Virus record (IMG/VR): IMGVR_UViG_3300044633_003049
Coordinates: 62,001-126,000 of that record
Strand: one strand, 5' to 3'
DNA: 64,000 nucleotides
Shown here: one piece after another, positions 16,165-61,829 of the stretch
How the letters are laid out: each line of letters opens with the position of its first letter
Position numbering within the stretch: position 1 is the stretch's first letter
Position numbers and translations under genes: made by a program
The notes under the pieces: model-generated
What the model was told of the DNA's origin: nothing
Databases searched by the model: none
What the model saw: the letters and a program-made list of their open reading frames with translations, nothing else

Positions 16165-17613
16165 CTACTTATTATAATTTTCTTTATCCGAAATATAAAC
16201 ACCAGGTTCAAAATGTGTTATTCTACCGTCAGTAACTTTAACATCACCAATTGTATTGTCAACCACCAATGAATTATACCAATCTTCCAACTCAGGAAAT
16301 GTTGCGACAAAATTCTTATTTCTACGAATATCATATTGAACATAAAAACTCTTAAAATCGTGATATTGCATTGACATGTCCATTTCACTTGTGTTATGAC
16401 CTCTATTAACAACTTCAATGTAATCAATTAATCTTTGAATTTGAGCCCCTTCATTCATATTAATTAATGGATTTTTTTTATGTTTTCTCCACCACATTGA
16501 TAACTTACCATGTAAATCATGTTTGACGTCATCTGGTAATGTAAGTGGTGACATAAATGCTGGCCATCTTAATATGTTAAAATCTACAATTGGTTTATGT
16601 GTTCCGTATTTTTCTTTTAATTTCAACATATCATCTAAAAATTCGGTAATACTAAATAAACACAAACTATTAATTGTCATCATAATAACAACTTGTCTAA
16701 TTTTAGCACTCTCAATTACTTTAACTAAATTACTTCTCCATAGTTCATAATTTAAACCATCTCTAATATATTCTGCTTGTGCACCATAAGCCTCACAACT
16801 TGTGTATAAATCAAACTCTTTGATGTCTAATTCGTGAGATATACTAATTAACCTATTCACAGTCATTTCATTAAGACCTAGGTTAGAATTGACTGCAAGT
16901 CGTAAATTAGGGGATGGGTATTGTTTCATTGTATCCATAAACTGCCAGAAATTACGAGATTGTGATGGTTCCCCACCAGTTACACGTATTTCCATTAATT
17001 TTTGTGATAACTCAGGCCACCATTTTAAAAAGGCATCCACATATGGATTATTCTCATTGTACTTACCATAAATCTCTGACCAAGATCCGTCAGCATAATA
17101 TGCCCCCGCACTTGTTGTTTTGAATTTCTGATATGGACCGTTATCTTTTATGTCTTTACCCCATGTTGTTGAGTATCCCGAATTACAATATGAACAAGCA
17201 AAATTACAAGTTCTATCAAATGATACCTCAATAGTTTGTGGTACAATGTCCGCATCCCAAGGTAGTTCTTTTAATGCCGCAATATCTTCTGAACTATATA
17301 TTTGACTCTTATATACTCTATCTGAAATATTATTTCTACCGATATCCTCAATTTTCCAACAATAAGAACATTCAGCCGGTTTAACACCCTCTAACATCAT
17401 TTTACGAATTTCTTTTTTGAAATCAGTATTATGTAATGCCGCAGGGTTGGTTTTAATTGCTTCAACATCTATTGGATGTGGTAATGGTAGGTGACATGAA
17501 TTTGTAAACCCATGACCTAAATGTAAACTAACATTTAACCATTTTGCCGCACAAAAACTACAACTTATCTTATTTAAATGTTCATCTCTCCAATTTGACA
17601 ATTCTTCTGACAT
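16165..17613 (-). CDS. Radical SAM enzyme with N-terminal twitch-like Cys cluster
   Basis: CAAKW..SCH...CSYCW auxiliary cluster; CNFACSYC; TGGEP. Confidence 0.9.
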   Translation of the reverse strand: MSEELSNWRDEHLNKISCSFCAAKWLNVSLHLGHGFTNSCHLPLPHPIDVEAIKTNPAALHNTDFKKEIRKMMLEGVKPAECSYCWKIEDIGRNNISDRVYKSQIYSSEDIAALKELPWDADIVPQTIEVSFDRTCNFACSYCNSGYSTTWGKDIKDNGPYQKFKTTSAGAYYADGSWSEIYGKYNENNPYVDAFLKWWPELSQKLMEIRVTGGEPSQSRNFWQFMDTMKQYPSPNLRLAVNSNLGLNEMTVNRLISISHELDIKEFDLYTSCEAYGAQAEYIRDGLNYELWRSNLVKVIESAKIRQVVIMMTINSLCLFSITEFLDDMLKLKEKYGTHKPIVDFNILRWPAFMSPLTLPDDVKHDLHGKLSMWWRKHKKNPLINMNEGAQIQRLIDYIEVVNRGHNTSEMDMSMQYHDFKSFYVQYDIRRNKNFVATFPELEDWYNSLVVDNTIGDVKVTDGRITHFEPGVYISDKENYNK

Positions 17614-17661
17614 GTTTTCTATTTTTTATAATATAATATTTTTTATTGATAATCTGAAACG

Positions 17662-18399
17662 TTATTTAATATATTCCTTAGGTACTCTTTCTAAAAAATT
17701 TGTATTTTTAGACTCATCATAAATTATACCTAAATTATTGATATTGTTAAAATTATGAAGAAAAAGAATGTCGTTATAAAATTCTTCCTCTAATATAACA
17801 TCAGTTTCACTTTGATAAATTAATTTAGAAAAATTAATATCACTATGGTTAACTATAGTTGAAAAATGATTAACATCCACTTGACAATAATATCTAGCAT
17901 TTTCAAAATCGCATTCAGGGCTGGAACATCCTAAAAATAAACCTGGATTTTTATAATCATCAATTAAGTTACCCTCAAAACTAATTCTATTATTTTCTTC
18001 AAAATTTTTATAAACTATAATTTCATTTTCTTTTTTTATGACAGTTATAATTACCCCTTTATGGATGTCCTCTTTTTTTATGTCTTTAAATGGAATAAAA
18101 TTAAAAGATTCCTCTATTTCGGTTTTATTCCAAAACTCAAATGCCATAGTATTTGTAGTTTTATTATATGATAACCCAATATTTTTACCAGGTTTACCAT
18201 ATATCATACAAATTTCATCGGTAATAAATTCTTCTGTTATTTTAAAATCACATGTAATAATGTAATTATCATTTAATAAGAATTCATCTAATATTTTATT
18301 ATTTGTTTTGTTATATTCGGTTACATATTGATTATCATGATGGGTTGACATATCCCATTGAAACTTAACCCAATAAGGTTGTTTATAATTTATTATCAT
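17662..18399 (-). CDS. Stand-alone LamG/concanavalin-like domain protein
   Basis: Beta-rich; GKPGKNIGLSY..FEFW and LFLGC..P motifs shared with the two N-terminal repeats of 18383-21184. Confidence 0.55.
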   Translation of the reverse strand: MIINYKQPYWVKFQWDMSTHHDNQYVTEYNKTNNKILDEFLLNDNYIITCDFKITEEFITDEICMIYGKPGKNIGLSYNKTTNTMAFEFWNKTEIEESFNFIPFKDIKKEDIHKGVIITVIKKENEIIVYKNFEENNRISFEGNLIDDYKNPGLFLGCSSPECDFENARYYCQVDVNHFSTIVNHSDINFSKLIYQSETDVILEEEFYNDILFLHNFNNINNLGIIYDESKNTNFLERVPKEYIK

Positions 18400-21184
18400 T
18401 TCTTATTTGCTTTATAAAATTAATTAATTCGGGATAATACTCCTCACAATTTACTCCTCTTCTTTTTTCATATTCATCAATGAATTTAATAAAATCTCTT
18501 TTACTACTATCAAATTCTTTAATGTCAGTATCGTAATCTGTAATGAAGATGTCTTTTATTCTTGAAATTTTTTCAATCTCTTGGGTTGAAAATCCGACGT
18601 CTTCAATAGTTTGTTGTTCATAGAAATTAATACTTCTATATGTTGAATTAAATTTCATGTACTTTAACCACCTATTAAAGTACTCAACATCAATATAATC
18701 TTTCAATACTCTAAAACTCATAAATGAAGGATGTCTCAAATATGATGTATCTAAAATAACTGCCGAGTTCCAATATCTTGATGTATTGAAATGTTTAAGT
18801 TTAAAACTATGTATTTTTTTAATTAGTTTTTCGTATGAAAATATACTAAACATATTAAAAGTTGACATTACTACAATGGTTACTTTGTCCAATACCGTTA
18901 AAATTTTATCTATGTTTGAGAATAGTCTATCAAACTCCAATCCAAATCTTGTGTATTCGGCTTGTTTACCGTATCCTTCACATGATGTAAACAATATTAC
19001 CTCCTTAACTCTACCTTCAGCAATTATTTTTTCTAATTTTAAAATTAATTTATCAATCAACTCATCTGATACACCTAAATTGCTATTGATTGATAATTTT
19101 AAATTTTCGTTAGGTGTGTCAGTTTCCAATATGAAATCTAATACTTTCCATGTGTCTTTTGATAATAGAGGTTCTCCACCGGTAATTCTAAAAGTATCTA
19201 AAGTTGAATATAATTCAGGGAACCATTCCCAAAACGCTTCCACATATGGATTTTCATCTGTTTGTTTATATGGTTTAGTATTTCTTTCCTCCATCCTTCT
19301 GAGACCATTAAATTCATGTGTATCTAACATATATCCTCCGTGTTCGTTAATCTCTTCCATCCATTTGGTCGAATATTCAGGTCCACAATACGCACATTTA
19401 AAATTACATGTGTTAGAAAAATTAACTTCAACATATTTTGGGTTGTAGTTATCTCTCCAATGTAAGTTGGCAATTTCGTCAAAGTGAGGTTCAGACCATG
19501 GTTCCGCAGATTTAAAAAATCTATCAGAAAATGAATCGGAATGATCTTCTACATTCCAACAATAATTACATTCACTTGGTCTTTTGTTTTCCAACATTTC
19601 TTTCCTAGCTCTCTTCTTTACATTACTATTGTGTAATGCGGTTGGGTTTCTTTTAATTTCATCTAACCCTATTTTATGTGGTTCAGGATGGTGACAACTA
19701 TGTGTTGTTCCATTATGTAAATGCATAGTCACTTGTGTCCATTTAGCCAAACAAAAACCACAACCAACTTTATTTAATTTTTCTTTAACAAGATTAAAAT
19801 CTACCATTGTCTTAAATGTTAATAAATCAACAAGTTCGATTGATGTTTCTTTATTTAAATTGTCAAAAATTTCATCAATATTATCAGTTTTTTTAAAATT
19901 AAAATAAGTTAAAGAATTATCTGTTTTTGTTAGTTTTTCTAAATCAACAATATTCATAATTCCATCATAAATACTAAAATGATTTAATTCCATTTCAGTA
20001 AAACATTTATGATTTTCTAATAAAGAACTTGGATTATGGCAACCGAAATAAATTGATTCCGTATTGTATTCAGATATTAAATTATCTTTAACTTCAATTG
20101 TGTCAATTAATTTAAAATTATGATACAATTCGAAATATTCATTCTTTTTATAAATTAAACTAATAGTAATTCCATTATGTAAATCGTTACGATTTATTTT
20201 ATAGTTTTTGTGGCAATGAAATTCTTTATTTTCTTCATCTTTTTGTGTCCAATATTCAAAAACAAACTTCTCGACTTCATAATCAAAGCTAATACCAAAG
20301 TTTTTACCTGGTATTCCAAAAAATCCAATTTTCTCATCTTGAGTAAAATGACGTTCTATTTTAAAAATAATATTTAATGAAAAATCTCTATTTGTTAATA
20401 AATTAGATTCTAAATTGGTTTTTAATTTAAATGGTTTTTTATGTTCAATTTTTAATCCAGGTACCCTTTTTCTTTTTAATTTTATTCTATCCGCAACACT
20501 GACATTTAATTCACTAAATGAAATGTTTATTAGTTTATCTTTTTGATTTTGTATTAGAAAATAATTATAGTCTTCTTTATGAACTAAATATTTTTCCTTT
20601 AAATCAAAGTAACATAACAAATTATCATTAAGATTTTTACTATTATAAAATTTTTCAACATCTTCTATATTCGCCTCTCCATTAAAAATACTAAAATGTT
20701 TTAAATCTAATTCTGTAAAACATTTGTGTTTGTGATTATCAGCATCGGGGTTATGACAACCAAAATAAAGTGGTTGGGTATAGTAATCTTCAATTAAAGG
20801 GTCGTCTAATTCTACATCGAAAAATATATTAAAGTCATGATATAATTCTAATATATTTTTTTCTTTATCGTAATGTATAGTTAAAACAAGACCATTTTCA
20901 ACATCAATTCTATTAATATGGAAATCTTTATGGCAGTGAAAATTATCTCTACCGTTCAACCCTTTTGTCCAAAATTCAAATACAAAAGTCTCAACTTCAA
21001 AATCATAACTAATTCCAAAGTTTTTACCTGGCATACCTAAAAATCCTAATTTTTCATTATCGTAAAAATTTTCAACTTTAAATTCAATTGTTAAATAGGA
21101 ACTATCAGATAAAAACGGATTTATCTTATTACTATCAAGATTATTAATTTCAAATAACCAAGGTTTTTGATTTTCTACTTTCAT
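18383..21184 (-). CDS. Two LamG-like domains fused to a twitch-type radical SAM enzyme
   Basis: Duplicated G.PGKNFGIS.D.EVE.FVFE.WT / YFGCHNP repeats; CLAKW..SCH, CNYCW, CNFKCAYC, TGGEP; paralog of 16165-17613. Confidence 0.85.
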   Translation of the reverse strand: MKVENQKPWLFEINNLDSNKINPFLSDSSYLTIEFKVENFYDNEKLGFLGMPGKNFGISYDFEVETFVFEFWTKGLNGRDNFHCHKDFHINRIDVENGLVLTIHYDKEKNILELYHDFNIFFDVELDDPLIEDYYTQPLYFGCHNPDADNHKHKCFTELDLKHFSIFNGEANIEDVEKFYNSKNLNDNLLCYFDLKEKYLVHKEDYNYFLIQNQKDKLINISFSELNVSVADRIKLKRKRVPGLKIEHKKPFKLKTNLESNLLTNRDFSLNIIFKIERHFTQDEKIGFFGIPGKNFGISFDYEVEKFVFEYWTQKDEENKEFHCHKNYKINRNDLHNGITISLIYKKNEYFELYHNFKLIDTIEVKDNLISEYNTESIYFGCHNPSSLLENHKCFTEMELNHFSIYDGIMNIVDLEKLTKTDNSLTYFNFKKTDNIDEIFDNLNKETSIELVDLLTFKTMVDFNLVKEKLNKVGCGFCLAKWTQVTMHLHNGTTHSCHHPEPHKIGLDEIKRNPTALHNSNVKKRARKEMLENKRPSECNYCWNVEDHSDSFSDRFFKSAEPWSEPHFDEIANLHWRDNYNPKYVEVNFSNTCNFKCAYCGPEYSTKWMEEINEHGGYMLDTHEFNGLRRMEERNTKPYKQTDENPYVEAFWEWFPELYSTLDTFRITGGEPLLSKDTWKVLDFILETDTPNENLKLSINSNLGVSDELIDKLILKLEKIIAEGRVKEVILFTSCEGYGKQAEYTRFGLEFDRLFSNIDKILTVLDKVTIVVMSTFNMFSIFSYEKLIKKIHSFKLKHFNTSRYWNSAVILDTSYLRHPSFMSFRVLKDYIDVEYFNRWLKYMKFNSTYRSINFYEQQTIEDVGFSTQEIEKISRIKDIFITDYDTDIKEFDSSKRDFIKFIDEYEKRRGVNCEEYYPELINFIKQIRNDNKL

Positions 21185-58319: not shown

Positions 58320-58846
58320 TATATGTTATTATCTCTTTGATTTATTAATGGTTCAATTGATGTTTTGAATGTTTCATCAAATTTCGCCAATTTTTCTAAC
58401 GCTGTTGCAACATTTTGTTCAAGTTTCAACATATCAGCATTAATATAAACACCACTTTCGGTTCCAGCGATAAAAACAAAGTTAATATCTTCATCTGGTA
58501 AATAACCATCCAATCTGATTTGGTCTTGGTTAATGGTCATCCCTGGGTCAAATTCTGCTATTTGTGAAACTTGTTGTTTGAAATTATCAATTAAACCTGA
58601 AATTGTAGTTTTTTGTGTTTCACTCAATGTCATGTCAGCTTGATCTGTAGATAATAACTTAACATCAACATTATTAATTACTGTAACGTCATTTTTTTGT
58701 TCTTGACTTGCATCATCAGATAATGTAGATTCGAACTCAGCAACCTCATTAATTGATTGTTTTGATATTTTAGATTCTGTTATAGACCTAATGGTCTTTA
58801 ACATATTCTTGGTTACATCATAATCTGTTTTCATTTTCATTTGCAT
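58319..58846 (-). CDS. Hypothetical (probable virion) protein
   Basis: Likely start in the MQMKMK region; N-terminal ITE/INE segments; TATTTATA at 58889-58896. Confidence 0.55.
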   Translation of the reverse strand: MQMKMKTDYDVTKNMLKTIRSITESKISKQSINEVAEFESTLSDDASQEQKNDVTVINNVDVKLLSTDQADMTLSETQKTTISGLIDNFKQQVSQIAEFDPGMTINQDQIRLDGYLPDEDINFVFIAGTESGVYINADMLKLEQNVATALEKLAKFDETFKTSIEPLINQRDNNI

Positions 58847-59441
58847 AATTAAAAAAGACCCCAAAATTAAAAGAAGGGTTTATATCTGTATAAATACTTG
58901 AAAAGTTGGATTTACATACTATTCCTTTGAAATTAGATATGTTTTCTAAATATCCTTGGGACGGTACGGTTTGTTTTGGTATTTCGTGTTTATCACATAG
59001 GGAATCACATAGTTCAGATAGTGAATTCATTTGGATTTCAGTGTACTTATCCCAAAAATAGTAGTTTCTCCAATTACGTATATGGGGTTCTGACCTATAT
59101 GGGTCTCCAATCCAATTATTAAGGACACCAGTGATGGTGTTCTTATTCAACCAACCCAAGTTCTCAATTGCTATTTTAATCATCCTCTTATCGTTCTGTG
59201 AGTCATTAAACGTATTAGAACTATAGTTGGTATCAAACAATTGATATGTACTACCTAATTTTGTAACTATAAAATGTGGGATGTCATCAAACTTACCATT
59301 ATTACGATGTTCAATTTTATTAACAAAGTCGTCAAATCTTCTTTGTGTATCGTATAGGAATATTTGAGTTTTTTTAGATTTTCTTTTATTAATAATTAAA
59401 CTATTATAATCTATTTTTTCTATTTCGTGTATTACTAACAT
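58818..59441 (-). CDS. Amidase_2 (N-acetylmuramoyl-L-alanine amidase)-fold protein, Zn ligands degenerate
   Basis: PHFIVTKLG..YQL, I.IAIENLG, YTEIQMNSL..L...L, TDINP; expected His ligands read LYDT and VCKS. Confidence 0.65.
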   Translation of the reverse strand: MLVIHEIEKIDYNSLIINKRKSKKTQIFLYDTQRRFDDFVNKIEHRNNGKFDDIPHFIVTKLGSTYQLFDTNYSSNTFNDSQNDKRMIKIAIENLGWLNKNTITGVLNNWIGDPYRSEPHIRNWRNYYFWDKYTEIQMNSLSELCDSLCDKHEIPKQTVPSQGYLENISNFKGIVCKSNFSSIYTDINPSFNFGVFFNYANENENRL

Positions 59442-59649
59442 TTTTCTTAATGAATTTAGGACCTAAATCAGTTAGTGGTGAGTTAAGAGTTATATCCTCA
59501 TTTGGTATTATAACCTTATTATTTTCCAAATCATATAGTACTTGGTTTGGATTTACGTCATCTTTTTCCCAATATAAATTATCAGAATCTTGAGATTCTA
59601 ACGTTGGGACGTTTTTTTCCGTTATTGGAATTTGGGGGTCTACTAATTT
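59404..59649 (-). CDS. Start-less ~80-codon ORF, probable -1 frameshift extension of 59643-61010
   Basis: Open -1 frame begins inside the A10 run (KLVDPQIPITEKNVP...RNRKNRL*); TGA just upstream; no ATG. Confidence 0.5.
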   Translation of the reverse strand, partial: KLVDPQIPITEKNVPTLESQDSDNLYWEKDDVNPNQVLYDLENNKVIIPNEDITLNSPLTDLGPKFIKKNVSNTRNRKNRL

Positions 59650-61010
59650 TTTTTTTCATCATTTTTTTCTAATGATGTGTCTTCTTCATTGTCGTAATGT
59701 AACCCTTCATTTCCATTCTGACCTATAATGTTCATTCTTTCGTCATCTTTAGGAATTTGACTTACTTTATAACCATTCTTTTTATGTTGTTCAATTGTTG
59801 TGAATATTTTATTATTTGCGGTTGTTGTTGGTTCTTCTTGTAAAATATTCTCTGTTTCAGGTTCTATAGTGGAAAAATTTCTTTTAATTTCTTCTTCAGT
59901 TGGTTCTTCTTGTAAAATTTTCTCCGTTTCTTCTTCAGTAAAGAATGGTTCTTCATCTTCTAAACCATCCATTAAAGTAACATCCCAATCTGATGTATCG
60001 TCATATAAACCTAATTCTTGGTCGTTCTTCATCATCTCCGCTAATAGTTCTCCACGTTTTTCACGTTCAATATCTGTCTTCATTTTATAATATTCGGCAG
60101 CAGATTTTAAATTGTCATTTGGTTTTGGTGGATTTAATAAAGTTTCTTCTAACTTCATTAAATCGTTTTCAGTTAAATGTAATCTTGTGGTTTCATCAAC
60201 AAAGTTTTTTAAATCTTCCGGAGACGATGGTTCTTTTTCATCCTCATCTTTCTTCTTACCTTCCATGGTTAATTGATTGAATGAAATAATTAACGCAACC
60301 GCCAATGGATCAAACACAATCACAATTAAAATTATAAAGAATTTAACAACAGAATTAAGTGGTACACCGAAAGATTCTGCTACAAAACGAAACCCCCCTA
60401 CTTCTTTTTCTAATTCAATATTATTATTTTTAATAACATTAATTGAATCTAATGATGCGTTGTTTTTTATTGTTAATTCATCAATTCTTTTTGAAATAGA
60501 ATTAATTTCTTTATCTGCGGATTTAATCATTTGAGACACTCTAGATGTTGATTTATCCTTATCAATTTGTTTGGTTAAATTTGTCTCTTGTGAATTACGA
60601 ATATTTTGTTGATTGTTTAATTGAGTGGTGTAACGAGATATTTCTAAATCATTTTTAGTAATTTGTGTTTGGTAAACTGCAATGTCTCTTTCAATTTTTT
60701 GTAATCCTAAATTTTGTTGTTGGAATGCATTTGAAAGATAACCGAAGATACCTGCAGATGTGATTAACATTAAAATAACAACGGAGGTGGTTAAATAAAT
60801 TTTACTAAGTAACTCTATTTTTTCCCACTTTTGTTTTAAATAAGTTGCGGTAACTAACTTTGCAAATTCTAATGAACTTGCCATAATCATAACGGCAATT
60901 GCAGCACCACTAAATAAAACACCAAGACCAGTTACTGAAAAATATGCAGCACTACCCGCAATCATAATAGCCGCCAGTGCAACCAAATACTTTAACCAAT
61001 TATTATTCAT
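59643..61010 (-). CDS. Membrane protein: 3 N-terminal TMs, coiled coil, TM, acidic tail
   Basis: AAYFSVTGL, SLEFAKLV, ITSAGIFGYLS, IVFDPLAVAL. Confidence 0.75.
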   Translation of the reverse strand: MNNNWLKYLVALAAIMIAGSAAYFSVTGLGVLFSGAAIAVMIMASSLEFAKLVTATYLKQKWEKIELLSKIYLTTSVVILMLITSAGIFGYLSNAFQQQNLGLQKIERDIAVYQTQITKNDLEISRYTTQLNNQQNIRNSQETNLTKQIDKDKSTSRVSQMIKSADKEINSISKRIDELTIKNNASLDSINVIKNNNIELEKEVGGFRFVAESFGVPLNSVVKFFIILIVIVFDPLAVALIISFNQLTMEGKKKDEDEKEPSSPEDLKNFVDETTRLHLTENDLMKLEETLLNPPKPNDNLKSAAEYYKMKTDIEREKRGELLAEMMKNDQELGLYDDTSDWDVTLMDGLEDEEPFFTEEETEKILQEEPTEEEIKRNFSTIEPETENILQEEPTTTANNKIFTTIEQHKKNGYKVSQIPKDDERMNIIGQNGNEGLHYDNEEDTSLEKNDEKKN

Positions 61011-61013
61011 ACC

Positions 61014-61829
61014 TTATAAATAGTTTAAGAGACCAAAACTTTCGTTTCTTAGTTTCTTAATAGCCTTATCACGTAATTGTCTTATACGTTCTTTAGTACA
61101 ACCAAACTCCTCACCTAAATCTTCCAAGTTAGATTCTATACCCGTTAACCCATAATATCTTTCAATGATTATTTTTTCTCTATCATCCAACACACTTAAC
61201 ATTGCTGAAACTTTTTTCTTTATTTCTTCCGGTGAATTAAGAATGGCGTCAGGACTTTCAGCCTCTCTATTAGGTATAACATCAATTAATTGGTCACCAT
61301 CTTCATTAATTTCTTTATATAAACCAATACAGTATGGGAGATTAACACCGATTGGTGTTTCATCTTCAACATTGTTTATGAAGAAATTATCTTCTTCACT
61401 TATTTCAATTTTCTTTTGTTTTTGAGCATCTTGTACTAAATTTGAAGGTATACGAATTGTTCTACAGTTTTCATTTAGAGATGCCATTATTGATTGTCTA
61501 ACCCACCACACCGCGTATGAAATAAATTTTAAACCAGTCGTCGGGTCAAATCTTTCCGCCGCTTTAATTAAACCAATATTACCTTCTGAAATAATGTCCA
61601 ACAAATCCATTCCCTGATTTTGAAACATTTTAGCCACAGATATTACAAATCTTAAATTACCAACAACCAATTCATTATAAAGTTTTCCTCTAGTTTCTTT
61701 ATCTGTTTTTTTATTGTTTAATAATTCAAAAACTTCTTCCTGTCTTTGATGTGACATTACAGGAATTTTTCGTAAATCTTTGATATACAATTGAATCTCG
61801 TCTGGATTAACTAAAATGGATTTTTTCAT
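61014..61829 (-). CDS. rpoD: RNA polymerase sigma-70 factor, Bacteroidetes RpoD-like (no region 1.1)
   Basis: NLRFVISVAK.FQNQG, EGNIGLIKAAERFD, KFISYAVWWVRQSI, region 4 TKERIRQ. Confidence 0.9.
   Translation of the reverse strand: MKKSILVNPDEIQLYIKDLRKIPVMSHQRQEEVFELLNNKKTDKETRGKLYNELVVGNLRFVISVAKMFQNQGMDLLDIISEGNIGLIKAAERFDPTTGLKFISYAVWWVRQSIMASLNENCRTIRIPSNLVQDAQKQKKIEISEEDNFFINNVEDETPIGVNLPYCIGLYKEINEDGDQLIDVIPNREAESPDAILNSPEEIKKKVSAMLSVLDDREKIIIERYYGLTGIESNLEDLGEEFGCTKERIRQLRDKAIKKLRNESFGLLNYL

What the first reader, a model, noticed from the sequence alone, without database searches (positions are those of the whole stretch)
59404..59660. Probable programmed -1 frameshift (or transcriptional slippage) extending a membrane protein
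Seen: the 455 aa gene ends GAA AAA AAA AAT TAG on an A10 run (59656-59647). The -1 frame is closed by TGA just before the run, then stays open for 80 codons with no ATG. It fills the 200 nt gap to the amidase-like gene and continues the D/E/N/P-rich tail. Short hairpins follow (AACGT-CCCA-ACGTT; AGAATCT-CA-AGATTCT). Known: A AAA AAN heptamers and A9+ runs drive recoding, as in dnaX; phage tail chaperones also use -1 frameshifts. Here the target is a polytopic coiled-coil membrane protein, which is unusual.
Basis: partly seen in the sequence, partly recalled or inferred. Interest (0 to 1): 0.65.

Follow-up and report, generated by a model that had tools for sequence, protein, structure and literature searches.

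The report
Conserved hairpin-plus-A10 recoding site in phage
A membrane-protein gene of an uncultured lake jumbo phage stops just after a run of ten A's, and about a hundred related phages keep that run, a small RNA hairpin touching it and an 80-codon continuation one frame back, so the gene very probably makes a short and a long protein by programmed slippage, most likely of RNA polymerase.

Summary
The 455-aa gene (59643-61010, minus strand) ends GAA AAA AAA AAT TAG on an A10 run. The -1 frame is closed by TGA TGA just before the run, then open for 83 codons.

The arrangement is conserved. Of 90 distinct homologous junctions in viral and metagenome contigs, 79 keep an A10 (68) or A11 (11) run, a 0-frame stop 0-3 codons later, and the extension in the -1 frame. 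The extension is under purifying selection and often has no start codon. In several lineages it is fused in frame.

The run is the only homopolymer of 10 or more in the 212-kb record. An independent DNA assembly also reads A10.

New here: a hairpin whose 3' arm ends at the base before the first A, supported by compensatory changes, some at paired synonymous sites.

This anatomy favours hairpin-assisted transcriptional slippage (A10 to A11 mRNA) over classical -1 ribosomal frameshifting. No RNA-level proof was obtainable. The one A11 RNA contig traces to a strain with genomic A11.

Function of both isoforms is unknown. The closest tested analogue is Citrobacter tssM.

The parts
59643..61010 (-). 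Zero-frame gene, the short isoform of 455 aa. It has four hydrophobic segments (about aa 8-27, 30-50, 70-92 and 221-245), a coiled coil at about aa 95-210, and an acidic C-terminal tail with net charge -31.
   Evidence: The N-terminal 247 aa are highly conserved. They are 28-36% identical to hypothetical proteins of jumbo phages. ESM Atlas clusters are 92-100% viral and unnamed. The only Pfam match over its cut-off is a weak TacA1-like hit (E 4.4e-05, 23.8 bits against a 21-bit cut-off) at aa 269-307.
59657..59677 (-). Hairpin CAUCAUU-AGAAAAA-AAUGAUG. The 5' arm is 59671-59677, the loop 59664-59670 and the 3' arm 59657-59663. Its last base is the base immediately before the first A of the run.
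   Evidence: Covariance model R1 matches window 59648-59680 at 43.7 bits, E 4e-8. The next best hit in the window scores 16.7 bits.
59647..59656 (-). A10 slippage run. It reads T10 on the plus strand.
   Evidence: An independent DNA contig confirms it. A run of A10 or A11 sits at the homologous place in 89 of 90 distinct junctions; the other has A9.
59643..59645 (-). Zero-frame stop codon TAG, one codon after the run.
   Evidence: In all split relatives a 0-frame stop lies 0-3 codons after the run, although its sequence context varies.
59656..59661 (-). Two TGA codons in the -1 frame that close it up to the run. Entry into the extension frame is therefore only possible within the run.
59407..59655 (-). 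The -1-frame extension of 83 codons. The long isoform would be 538 aa (455 - 1 + 84), matching the 539-aa natural fusion P0003 (that strain's body is 1 aa longer); the junction would read ...NDEKKKLVDPQIP....
   Evidence: Natural in-frame fusions are P0003 (L088/L089), P0047 and P0051-58. dN/dS has a median of 0.41 and falls to 0.12 in some pairs.
59503..59577 (-). Conserved core of the extension, LYWEKDDVNPNQVLYDLENNKVIIP. The family consensus is LYWE.DD.NPNQ[VI]IYDLENNK.IIP.
   Evidence: The AlphaFold2 model shows only a small beta-hairpin here in an otherwise disordered tail, at low confidence.
58818..59441 (-). Downstream Amidase_2 gene, a candidate endolysin or PGRP-like amidase. Its first 35 nt overlap the end of the extension in another frame.
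   Evidence: The same synteny and a 32-38-nt overlap are seen in L088-L091.
59581..59602 (-). It encodes TLESQDS in the extension frame, and the third frame stops inside it.
   Evidence: It is semi-conserved in several lineages but lies at a variable distance from the run, 53-105 nt.
61014..61829 (-). Upstream sigma-70-family gene (context). It implies use of a multisubunit RNA polymerase.
   Evidence: Sigma70_r2 E 4e-15, r4 E 8e-12; phrog_351 E 2e-50. No T7-like or beta-subunit RNA polymerase was found in the partial record.

Best explanation
This is a programmed recoding site that makes two C-terminal isoforms of a phage inner-membrane protein.

Standard decoding gives the 455-aa form, ending EKKN. 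In a fraction of expression events one extra A enters the message at the A10 run. The TAG is then out of frame and translation continues for 83 codons: EKKK-LVDPQ...LYWEKDDVNPNQVLYDLENNKVIIP...NRL.

The most likely mechanism is transcriptional slippage by the host multisubunit RNA polymerase, directed by the phage sigma factor. The run is as long as the 9-10 bp RNA:DNA hybrid, so the hybrid can re-pair out of register without mismatch. A nascent-RNA hairpin whose stem ends exactly at the first A can form in the exit channel when the polymerase reaches the end of the run. This is terminator-like geometry with A's in place of U's, and it would destabilise the upstream end of the hybrid and promote realignment.

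The genomic state 'one A short of fusion' sets the short form as the major product and the long form as the minor one. Lineages with an in-frame run would make the reverse ratio.

Shown: the sequence anatomy, its conservation, coding constraint on the extension, hairpin covariation, and A10 in DNA.

Inferred: that slippage happens, that it is transcriptional, its direction (+1 A), its frequency, and what the two isoforms do.
For: 1. Conservation of the split arrangement. Of 90 distinct junctions found through the extension peptide, 79 have the extension in -1 with A10 (68) or A11 (11) and a 0-frame stop 0-3 codons after the run. A11 lineages still need the same shift, so this is not a length-calling error. 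One major branch of the N-domain tree is split in 18 of 18 members, yet keeps the extension.

2. The extension is protein-coding and belongs to the upstream protein. dN/dS has a median of 0.41, and is 0.12-0.13 in several pairs. In 21 of 59 ORFs there is no ATG, GTG or TTG before the conserved motif. Natural in-frame fusions have arisen at least four times: L088/89 and L090 by A11, and the L024 group and the L091/L148 group by other changes.

3. The run is under nucleotide-level constraint. It is the only homopolymer of 10 or more in 211,784 bp, against about 14 expected. AAA makes up 82.5% of Lys codons, so retaining an all-A run in dozens of diverged lineages is not codon bias.

4. Evidence for transcription rather than translation.
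- The run is never shorter than 10 in split loci, although a heptamer would suffice for a ribosome.
- A hairpin of 7 or more consecutive pairs ends exactly at the run in 58% of 52 distinct sequences, against 1.4% of control positions in the same genes.
- There are 33 double-sided compensatory cells against 13.3 +/- 2.6 in shuffles (0 of 500). Pairing is 79%, against 18-35% when slid by 1-2 columns.
- Covariation includes paired synonymous third positions, ACA..GAU changing to ACG..GAC. Arms also change the amino acids on both sides, for example TSL..NDE, TSS..EDE, TSP..GDE and STNSEELVE.
- The downstream 60 nt show no structure signal, mean z -0.32.
- Relatives whose run lies in frame inside the ORF (clade B) lack the hairpin.

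5. Precedent in the literature.
- Bacterial RNA polymerase slips efficiently on runs of 9 A or T, the hybrid is 9-10 bp, and Thermus dnaX adds A's (PMC5009743).
- A stem-loop 5'-adjacent to the motif stimulates slippage in Roseiflexus IS630 (PMC5009743).
- Citrobacter tssM1 has A11 before a stop and gives 20-25% of an extended inner-membrane protein. Yersinia tssM3 has the run in frame and gives the reverse ratio (PMC4256274).
- In E. coli A_AAA_AAA is much less shifty for ribosomes than A_AAA_AAG (PMC5009743).
Against: There is no direct RNA evidence. All sequencing runs were available only as assembled contigs.
- The one RNA contig with A11 (X16) shares 8 of 9 SNPs with strains that carry genomic A11 (L088/89). 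It is therefore explained by DNA polymorphism.
- The other RNA contig (X15) shows A10.
- Both RNA contigs end 18-19 nt beyond the run, which would fit length heterogeneity in the reads. It would equally fit a mix of strains or low depth.

Other weaknesses:
- In the Roseiflexus precedent the hairpin promotes a deletion, whereas fusion here needs +1 A (or -2).
- The window's own hairpin is weak, 7 A-U-rich pairs at -4.7 kcal/mol.
- About a quarter of the distinct sequences show only bulged or short stems.
- The aligned sequences are related, so the shuffle statistics overstate independence. Slides of +/-3 columns still pair 57-63%, because of codon periodicity.
- Host and RNA polymerase are unknown, and the record is about 63% complete.
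- A_AAA_AAA is a legitimate ribosomal slip site, so a translational contribution cannot be excluded.
Confidence: 0.6

Rival explanations
1. Translational recoding. Ribosomes shift -1 on the A_AAA_AAA heptamer, or slide on the poly(A), just before the 0-frame stop. This yields the same EKKK-LVD junction from unedited A10 mRNA.
For: - The run contains an in-phase X_XXY_YYZ heptamer in every locus.
- A 0-frame stop sits 0-3 codons after the run, and a nearby stop can favour shifting.
- E. coli ribosomes slide on homopolymeric A (PMC4363877).
- The protein product cannot be told apart from that of slippage.
Against: - No conserved structure lies 5-9 nt downstream, or anywhere in the next 60 nt. 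Mean z is -0.32 and some loci have an MFE of 0.
- Selection keeps 10-11 A's where 7 would do.
- The conserved hairpin is upstream and would be unwound inside the ribosome while the run is decoded (inference from the ribosome footprint). From memory, not checked here: upstream hairpins have been reported to attenuate -1 shifting.
- A_AAA_AAA is a poor slip site in E. coli (PMC5009743).
- Sliding was robust at A11 but weak at A9 and A10, and 68 of 79 split loci have A10.
Confidence: 0.2
2. DNA-level phase variation only. The tract mutates between A10 and A11 during phage replication. Each genome makes only one isoform, and the population is a mix of short-only and long-only phages.
For: Close strains differ only in tract length:
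- L052 has A10 and L088/89 have A11, with identical N-domains.
- L071/L116 have A10 and L090 has A11.
- L086 has A11 and L085 has A10.
- L116 has A10 and L115 has A9.
The A11 RNA contig matches the A11 strain.
Against: - The states are very unequal: 79 of 90 are one A short of fusion, and only 3 of 90 are in the third frame. Tract lengths are confined to 10-11, unlike typical contingency loci.
- A whole major branch is 18 of 18 split yet keeps the extension under purifying selection. That needs expression from the split genotype.
- A11 lineages compensate so as to stay in the -1 relation.
- The covarying hairpin has no role in this model.
Confidence: 0.1
3. There is no recoding. The downstream ORF is a separate small gene with an unusual start, or a decaying remnant of a formerly fused gene, and the A run is incidental lysine coding.
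For: - Gene callers annotate only the 455-aa product in most assemblies.
- Some extension ORFs contain TTG codons, and rarely ATG, before the motif.
Against: - 21 of 59 ORFs have no start codon before the conserved motif, and the window has none.
- The -1 frame opens exactly at the run.
- dN/dS is below 1 across deep divergence.
- The run is the single longest homopolymer in a genome that avoids them.
- In-frame fusions show that the module belongs to this protein.
Confidence: 0.05

Closest known systems
Citrobacter rodentium tssM1 and Yersinia pseudotuberculosis tssM3 transcriptional frameshifting (PMC4256274)
   Same: An inner-membrane protein gene is interrupted by a stop just after a poly-A run (A11). 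RNA polymerase adds A's, giving a truncated major form and an extended minor form (20-25%). In a relative the run is in frame and recoding gives the short form instead. That mirrors the split and fused lineages here.
   Different: - It is a bacterial secretion-system gene, not a phage gene, and the proteins are unrelated.
- The 5'-adjacent hairpin seen here was not among the passages I read for tssM.
- tssM recoding is experimentally shown, whereas this case rests on sequence comparison only.
- The site here is conserved across about a hundred diverged genomes, while poly-A tssM is rare.
Roseiflexus IS630 stem-loop-stimulated transcriptional slippage (Penno et al. 2015, as summarised in PMC5009743)
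   Same: A nascent-RNA stem-loop lies directly 5' of the slippage motif, in terminator-like geometry. [quoted passage not shown]
   Different: - There the motif is the short heteropolymer T5C5, which does not slip without the hairpin. The event is a specific one-base deletion, and the stem is G+C-rich.
- Here the motif is an A10-11 homopolymer that should slip unaided. Fusion needs +1 (or -2), and the stems are 7-10 bp and A+U-rich.
Thermus thermophilus dnaX (A9 run) and Shigella mxiE, spa33 and mxiA slippage (PMC5009743)
   Same: Homopolymer runs of 9 or more A or T are used productively to make two products with a shared N-terminus. mxiE slippage gives an extended product and affects the adjacent downstream gene. 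Here the extension overlaps the start of the next gene.
   Different: The summaries I read do not mention a conserved adjacent hairpin for these cases. They are cellular genes, and the proteins are unrelated.
E. coli dnaX and phage lambda G/GT type -1 programmed ribosomal frameshifting
   Same: Two isoforms with a fixed ratio arise from overlapping frames at an A-rich slippery site. A_AAA_AAG in dnaX resembles the heptamer contained in this run.
   Different: Those sites rely on a heptamer plus a 3' stem-loop or pseudoknot, and in dnaX also a 5' Shine-Dalgarno-like element. Here no 3' structure is conserved, the run is 10-11 nt, and the conserved structure is 5' and touches the run.

Membership tests
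Programmed transcriptional slippage on a homopolymer (Thermus dnaX, tssM and mxiE type) | A run of about 9 or more identical A or T at the junction of two overlapping frames | tested here: met
   A10 at 59647-59656. A10 or A11 in 89 of 90 distinct junctions, and A9 in the other.
Programmed transcriptional slippage on a homopolymer (Thermus dnaX, tssM and mxiE type) | The run and the trans-frame ORF are conserved among homologues, and the trans-frame ORF is under coding constraint | tested here: met
   79 of 90 junctions are split in the same -1 relation. dN/dS has a median of 0.41. In-frame fusions exist.
Programmed transcriptional slippage on a homopolymer (Thermus dnaX, tssM and mxiE type) | mRNA run length is heterogeneous (extra A's) while the DNA is homogeneous | tested here: inconclusive
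   Only assembled contigs were available. A DNA contig reads A10 across the site. One RNA contig reads A10 and one reads A11, but the A11 contig matches a strain with genomic A11.
Programmed transcriptional slippage on a homopolymer (Thermus dnaX, tssM and mxiE type) | Both isoforms are detected as proteins, and the long form is lost when AAA is changed to AAG | not testable with these tools
   This needs expression experiments.
Stem-loop-stimulated slippage (Roseiflexus IS630 type) | A nascent-RNA hairpin directly 5' of the slippage motif, supported by covariation | tested here: met
   Gap of 0 in most loci. 58% against 1.4% of control positions for stems of 7 or more pairs. 33 compensatory cells against 13.3 +/- 2.6, 0 of 500 shuffles. 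R1 hit at 43.7 bits.
Stem-loop-stimulated slippage (Roseiflexus IS630 type) | A short heteropolymeric motif that slips only with the hairpin, giving a one-base deletion | tested here: not met
   The motif here is an A10-11 homopolymer, and fusion requires +1 or -2 nt. This site works like that family but is not a member in the strict sense.
-1 programmed ribosomal frameshift (dnaX, lambda G/GT type) | An in-phase slippery heptamer X_XXY_YYZ | tested here: met
   A_AAA_AAA lies in the 0 frame in all loci.
-1 programmed ribosomal frameshift (dnaX, lambda G/GT type) | A stimulatory stem-loop or pseudoknot about 5-9 nt downstream, conserved among homologues | tested here: not met
The downstream 60 nt have mean z -0.32 and only 10% fall below -2. 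Several loci have an MFE of 0 to -1.
-1 programmed ribosomal frameshift (dnaX, lambda G/GT type) | An upstream Shine-Dalgarno-like stimulator | not tested
   The host and its anti-Shine-Dalgarno usage are unknown, and I ran no scan for such a motif.
Phase-variable contingency locus (replication slippage) | Tract length differs between close strains and switches the frame | tested here: met
   L052 A10 against L088/89 A11. L116 A10 against L115 A9. L086 A11 against L085 A10.
Phase-variable contingency locus (replication slippage) | ON and OFF states are both common, with a broad spread of tract lengths | tested here: not met
   79 of 90 junctions are in one state. Lengths are confined to 10-11, with a single A9.
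Phage holin or lysis regulator (considered because of the adjacent amidase) | A match to a holin family, or a small membrane protein with 1-4 transmembrane segments and a charged C-terminus | tested here: inconclusive
   No Pfam or PHROG family matched. The protein is 455 aa, with four hydrophobic segments and a 110-aa coiled coil. Adjacency to Amidase_2 is the only link.

The most novel reading that the evidence does not exclude
A widespread family of freshwater jumbo phages has evolved a dedicated RNA-polymerase 'editing' signal: a terminator-like hairpin fused to an A10-11 tract. The signal meters the ratio of two isoforms of a conserved membrane protein. The hairpin tunes the frequency or direction of slippage on a homopolymer, a combination not described before. 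The long isoform's conserved LYWE...NPNQVIYDL...IIP peptide, whose reading frame runs into the start of the amidase gene, would couple membrane-protein status to control of the cell-wall amidase, for example in lysis timing.
Probability: 0.2. Interest if true: 0.8.

Novelty: new variant of a known kind. Interest (0 to 1): 0.62.

Why it matters
Programmed transcriptional slippage is documented in only a handful of bacterial genes and insertion sequences. The phage recoding surveys I read (PMC5009743, PMC10274946) deal mainly with ribosomal frameshifts in tail-chaperone and capsid genes.

Here about a hundred diverged natural sequences keep the same three-part signal: hairpin, A10-11 and an adjacent stop. 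They show compensatory changes and natural 'mutants', namely fused, A11 and hairpin-less lineages. This is a ready-made comparative data set for asking how a nascent-RNA hairpin acts on a homopolymeric hybrid, and why the geometry resembles an intrinsic terminator with A's in place of U's.

There is also a practical point. Gene callers truncate this protein in most assemblies and leave a 200-nt 'intergenic' gap. Homopolymer 'errors' at this site should not be corrected.

The function of the membrane protein, which is shared with many cultured jumbo phages, and of its optional tail remains open.

Tried and rejected
- Megablast of the locus against 50,697 phage records found no match. tblastn found only distant N-domain relatives, annotated as hypothetical.
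- Pfam, PHROGs and the ESM Atlas gave no functional family for the membrane protein or the extension. The TacA1-like hit at aa 269-307 is marginal, and I did not build on it.
- Reads: only assembled contigs were served, so run-length heterogeneity could not be measured. I first took the A11 RNA contig (X16) as a sign of slippage, then rejected that. It carries 8 of 9 SNPs of the A11 DNA strain L088/89.
- AlphaFold2 on the natural fused protein with a 37-sequence alignment gave mean pLDDT 48 and pTM 0.26. That is too poor for fold searches, so none were run.
- Complex prediction of the extension with the downstream amidase gave no verdict (score 0.00). This is not evidence either way.
- A scan of the whole record for other 'ORF ends at a run, another frame opens' sites found nothing convincing. 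The A9/T9 runs are intergenic or inside ORFs. Model R1 finds no second site in the window.
- No T7-like or beta-subunit RNA polymerase was found, but the record is partial.
- The large representative-protein search was not used, because the word search already gave 6,292 relatives.
- No alternative genetic code was invoked.
Full report
**What is there**

All features lie on the minus strand. A 455-aa ORF (59643-61010) ends GAT GAA AAA AAA AAT TAG. The A10 run is 59647-59656. The -1 frame reads TGA TGA up to the first A of the run. It then stays open for 83 codons (59655-59407) and ends TAA TAG. This fills the 201-nt gap to an Amidase_2 gene (58818-59441) and overlaps its first 35 nt. A sigma-70-family gene lies directly upstream (61014-61829).

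The record is an IMG/VR virus contig of 211,784 bp with 31% G+C. CheckV estimates it 63% complete, and it is labelled 'provirus'. Tail-fibre and virion genes lie at 31-50 kb of the window. Relatives come from lake metagenomes, on contigs of up to 335 kb. This is an uncultured freshwater jumbo phage.

**Is A10 real and unusual?**

- Two 100%-identical IMG/VR contigs read A10.
- An independent DNA run (X7) has an 885-nt contig crossing the site with no differences and no gaps.
- The run is the only homopolymer of 10 or more in the whole record. There are twelve runs of 9, and a first-order model expects about 14 runs of 10 or more. Long runs are therefore avoided, except here.

**Comparative census**

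The word search found 6,292 relatives. Among the 120 best, almost all end ...DEKKN...DEKKK or ...EKKKY, however different their acidic tails. About a dozen are longer and carry the extension in frame: P0003 at 539 aa, P0047/56 at 572-573 aa, P0051-58 at 621 aa, and P0089 and P0104/107 at 638-641 aa.

I then searched by the extension peptide itself (alignment A1). That search is blind to the junction type. I classified 120 loci from IMG/VR and JGI metagenomes, which gave 90 distinct junctions:

| Junction state | Count | Run length |
|---|---|---|
| Extension in -1 relative to the long upstream ORF | 79 | 68 with A10, 11 with A11 |
| Extension in frame (fused) | 8 | All A10, with a compensating base elsewhere; two groups, 'gatgA10tttaa' and 'aattA10tta[ct]tagaa' |
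| Extension in the third frame | 3 | L085 A10, L115 A9, L117 A11; each differs from close relatives by one A in the tract (judged from flanking sequence) |

Further points from the census:
- In every split locus a 0-frame stop follows within 0-3 codons of the run. Its context varies widely (TTAG, CTAG, GTAG, TAA, TATTGA, TTCTTGA, CAATTAA, TTTTTAA and others).
- The A11 lineages (for example L007, L010, L081) still place the extension in -1. 'A10 miscalled for A11' cannot explain the pattern.
- Genomic A11 fusions also exist next to A10 sisters. These are L088/L089, from two samples, and L090.
- On a tree of the N-terminal domain the split state occupies both major branches, one of them 18 of 18. 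Fused forms appear at four or more places.

**The extension is coding and belongs to this protein**

- Its core, LYWE.DD.NPNQ[VI]IYDLENNK.IIP, is nearly invariant down to about 35% overall identity.
- Pairwise dN/dS has a median of 0.41 over 1,316 pairs. It is 0.12-0.13 for L068/L070, L071/L116 and L078/L079.
- In 21 of 59 distinct ORFs, including the window's, there is no ATG, GTG or TTG before the motif. ATG is rare.
- The in-frame fusions serve as Rosetta-stone evidence that the module is part of this protein.
- A lineage-wide split genotype with a conserved extension requires expression from the split genotype, which means recoding.

**Which mechanism?**

Three observations discriminate.

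1. Run length. Split loci always have 10-11 A's, although a ribosome needs only the heptamer. The run matches the 9-10 bp RNA:DNA hybrid. Bacterial RNA polymerase slips efficiently on runs of 9 or more (PMC5009743). AAA is 82.5% of Lys codons, so an unbroken run in dozens of diverged lineages is selected.

2. A hairpin abuts the run. In the window it is CAUCAUU-AGAAAAA-AAUGAUG (59677-59657), and the next base is the first A. Across loci the stem sequence changes but the pairing and the zero gap persist:
 - CAUCUUC/GAAGAUG
 - CAUCAUC/GAUGAUG
 - CAUCACC/GGUGAUG
 - CGUCACCU/AGG(A)UGACG
 - CAACAUUAG/CUGAUGUUG
 - CAACUAACUC/GAGUUAGUUG
 - CAACCAUUC/GAAUCGGUUG

 These are listed. The changes alter the amino acids on both arms. 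They also include coupled synonymous third positions, Thr ACA with Asp GAU changing to ACG with GAC. The constraint is therefore on nucleic acid, not protein.

 Quantitatively, 58% of 52 distinct sequences have 7 or more consecutive pairs ending exactly at the run. Only 1.4% of about 60,000 control positions in the same genes do. In one fixed register, 79% of cells pair, against 18-35% at slides of 1-2 columns. There are 33 double-sided changes against 13.3 +/- 2.6 in shuffles, 0 of 500. Two caveats apply. The sequences are related, and slides of 3 columns still pair 57-63%, owing to codon periodicity. A covariance model of hairpin plus run hits the window once, at 43.7 bits and E 4e-8, with the next hit at 16.7 bits.

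3. Nothing lies downstream. The 60 nt after the run have mean z -0.32, and several loci do not fold at all. The AGAAUCU/AGAUUCU palindrome is semi-conserved but sits 53-105 nt from the run.

A hairpin touching a hybrid-length homopolymer has the geometry of an intrinsic terminator with A's in place of U's. It resembles the stem-loop that drives slippage in Roseiflexus IS630 (PMC5009743). A ribosome decoding the run would hold the 3' arm unwound, so an upstream hairpin is an unlikely -1 stimulator (inference).

In E. coli, A_AAA_AAA is a weak ribosomal slip site. Ribosome sliding was robust at A11 but slight at A9-A10 (PMC4363877).

Relatives in which an A9-11 run lies in frame inside the ORF (clade B) lack the abutting hairpin. 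Their C-terminal domain has DxDGDG repeats and ends YPTDFSGKSY.

I therefore favour hairpin-assisted transcriptional slippage (about 0.6) over a ribosomal event (about 0.2). Mixtures are possible. The required change is +1 A (or -2). The Roseiflexus hairpin promotes a deletion, so the direction here is an open point.

**RNA data**

Only assembled contigs could be laid. Metatranscriptome contigs cover parts of the locus. One spans the run with A10 (X15) and one with A11 (X16). The A11 contig shares 8 of 9 SNPs with the A11 DNA strain L088/89, so it is not evidence of editing. Both RNA contigs stop 18-19 nt past the run, whereas the DNA contig runs through. This is what a graph branch at a length-heterogeneous run would give. 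A strain mix or low depth explains it equally well. I count it as no more than a hint.

**DNA polymorphism**

Tract-length variants among close strains are real. A pure phase-variation model is nevertheless a poor fit, for three reasons:
- the strong excess of one state;
- the narrow length range;
- the conserved extension in all-split clades.

The fused lineages that keep both hairpin and A10 (the L024 group) have a stop right after the run in the +1 frame (KKKI*). A one-base deletion in the message would therefore recreate a short isoform. This is the mirror image of the split lineages, as in Yersinia tssM3 against Citrobacter tssM1 (PMC4256274).

**The protein**

It has four hydrophobic segments, a coiled coil of about 110 aa between the third and fourth, and a strongly acidic tail with net charge -31. 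KKK follows the last transmembrane segment, which suggests a cytoplasmic tail by the positive-inside rule (inference).

The N-terminal 247 aa are highly conserved. They recur in cultured jumbo phages: XacN1, RsoM2USA, CM1, SCTP-2, Pelagibacter Mosig, Microcystis Mel-JY01 and Flavobacterium immuto. All are annotated as hypothetical.

AlphaFold2 gave a helical N-domain and a disordered tail with a tiny beta-hairpin in the extension core, at low confidence (pLDDT 48). The extension looks like a short linear binding motif on a flexible tail, and its partner is unknown. A complex prediction with the neighbouring amidase gave no verdict. Function is therefore inferred only at the level of 'two isoforms in a set ratio'.

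**Verdict**

The mechanism is probably transcriptional, with a newly noticed conserved hairpin. It is a new variant of a known kind, and the closest tested analogue is tssM.

Noticed in passing
L011-L038 (for example L013:3001-4410): A sister group of the same membrane protein ('clade B') has an A9-A11 run at the homologous place but in frame (...YNED IKKN EIDS...). A 114-130-aa domain follows, with DxDGDG calcium-binding-like repeats, ending YPTDFSGKSY. The -1 frame stops after 5-6 codons (HKKKRN*). There is no abutting hairpin. Slippage there would truncate the protein rather than extend it.
   Followed up: partly
window 59581-59602 (-), and relatives listed: A semi-conserved palindrome, UUAGAAUCU..AGAUUCU(AA/GA), encodes (T)LES.DS in the extension frame. 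The third frame, reached by loss of one A, stays open 20-42 codons in most loci. In several lineages it ends inside this palindrome with a similar peptide (..NVRISRF* or ..LKVTRIS*). A third, basic-tailed isoform cannot be excluded.
   Followed up: partly
window 59407-59441 (-): The last 12 codons of the extension (..KKNVSNTRNRKNRL; RNVS..RRRNFR in relatives) overlap the amidase start in another frame. The conserved 'RNVS' coincides with the amidase AAAUGUUAGU start context. The basic tail may therefore be a by-product of the overlap, and it is absent in the L007/L010/L020 lineages. Ribosomes translating the extension would run across the amidase start, so translational coupling or occlusion is possible.
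   Followed up: no
L092, compared with the window: The gene is mosaic. The L092 extension is 98% identical to the window's and its acidic tail is 79% identical, but its N-terminal membrane domain is only 57% identical. C-terminal modules appear to have been exchanged between lineages, so the N-domain tree does not track the tails.
   Followed up: partly
whole record G000: Long A or T homopolymers are depleted genome-wide. There is 1 run of 10 or more against about 14 expected, and 12 runs of 9 against about 22 expected at exactly that length (about 36 at 9 or more).
   Followed up: partly
window 28000-52000: This region has higher G+C (0.34-0.38 against 0.26-0.31 elsewhere). It holds very large tail-fibre or collagen-like genes of 833-1,460 aa. 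IMG/VR labels the record 'provirus' with 63% completeness.
   Followed up: no
window 16165-21184 (-): Two large ORFs (482 and 933 aa) have radical-SAM-domain PHROG matches. This is unusual cargo for a phage and was not examined further.
   Followed up: no
P0001 aa 269-307 (window about 60090-60206, -): A short segment of the acidic tail matches Pfam TacA1, the C-terminal part of an antitoxin, just above the gathering score (E 4e-5). The same family is precomputed for many homologues. Its meaning is unclear.
   Followed up: no
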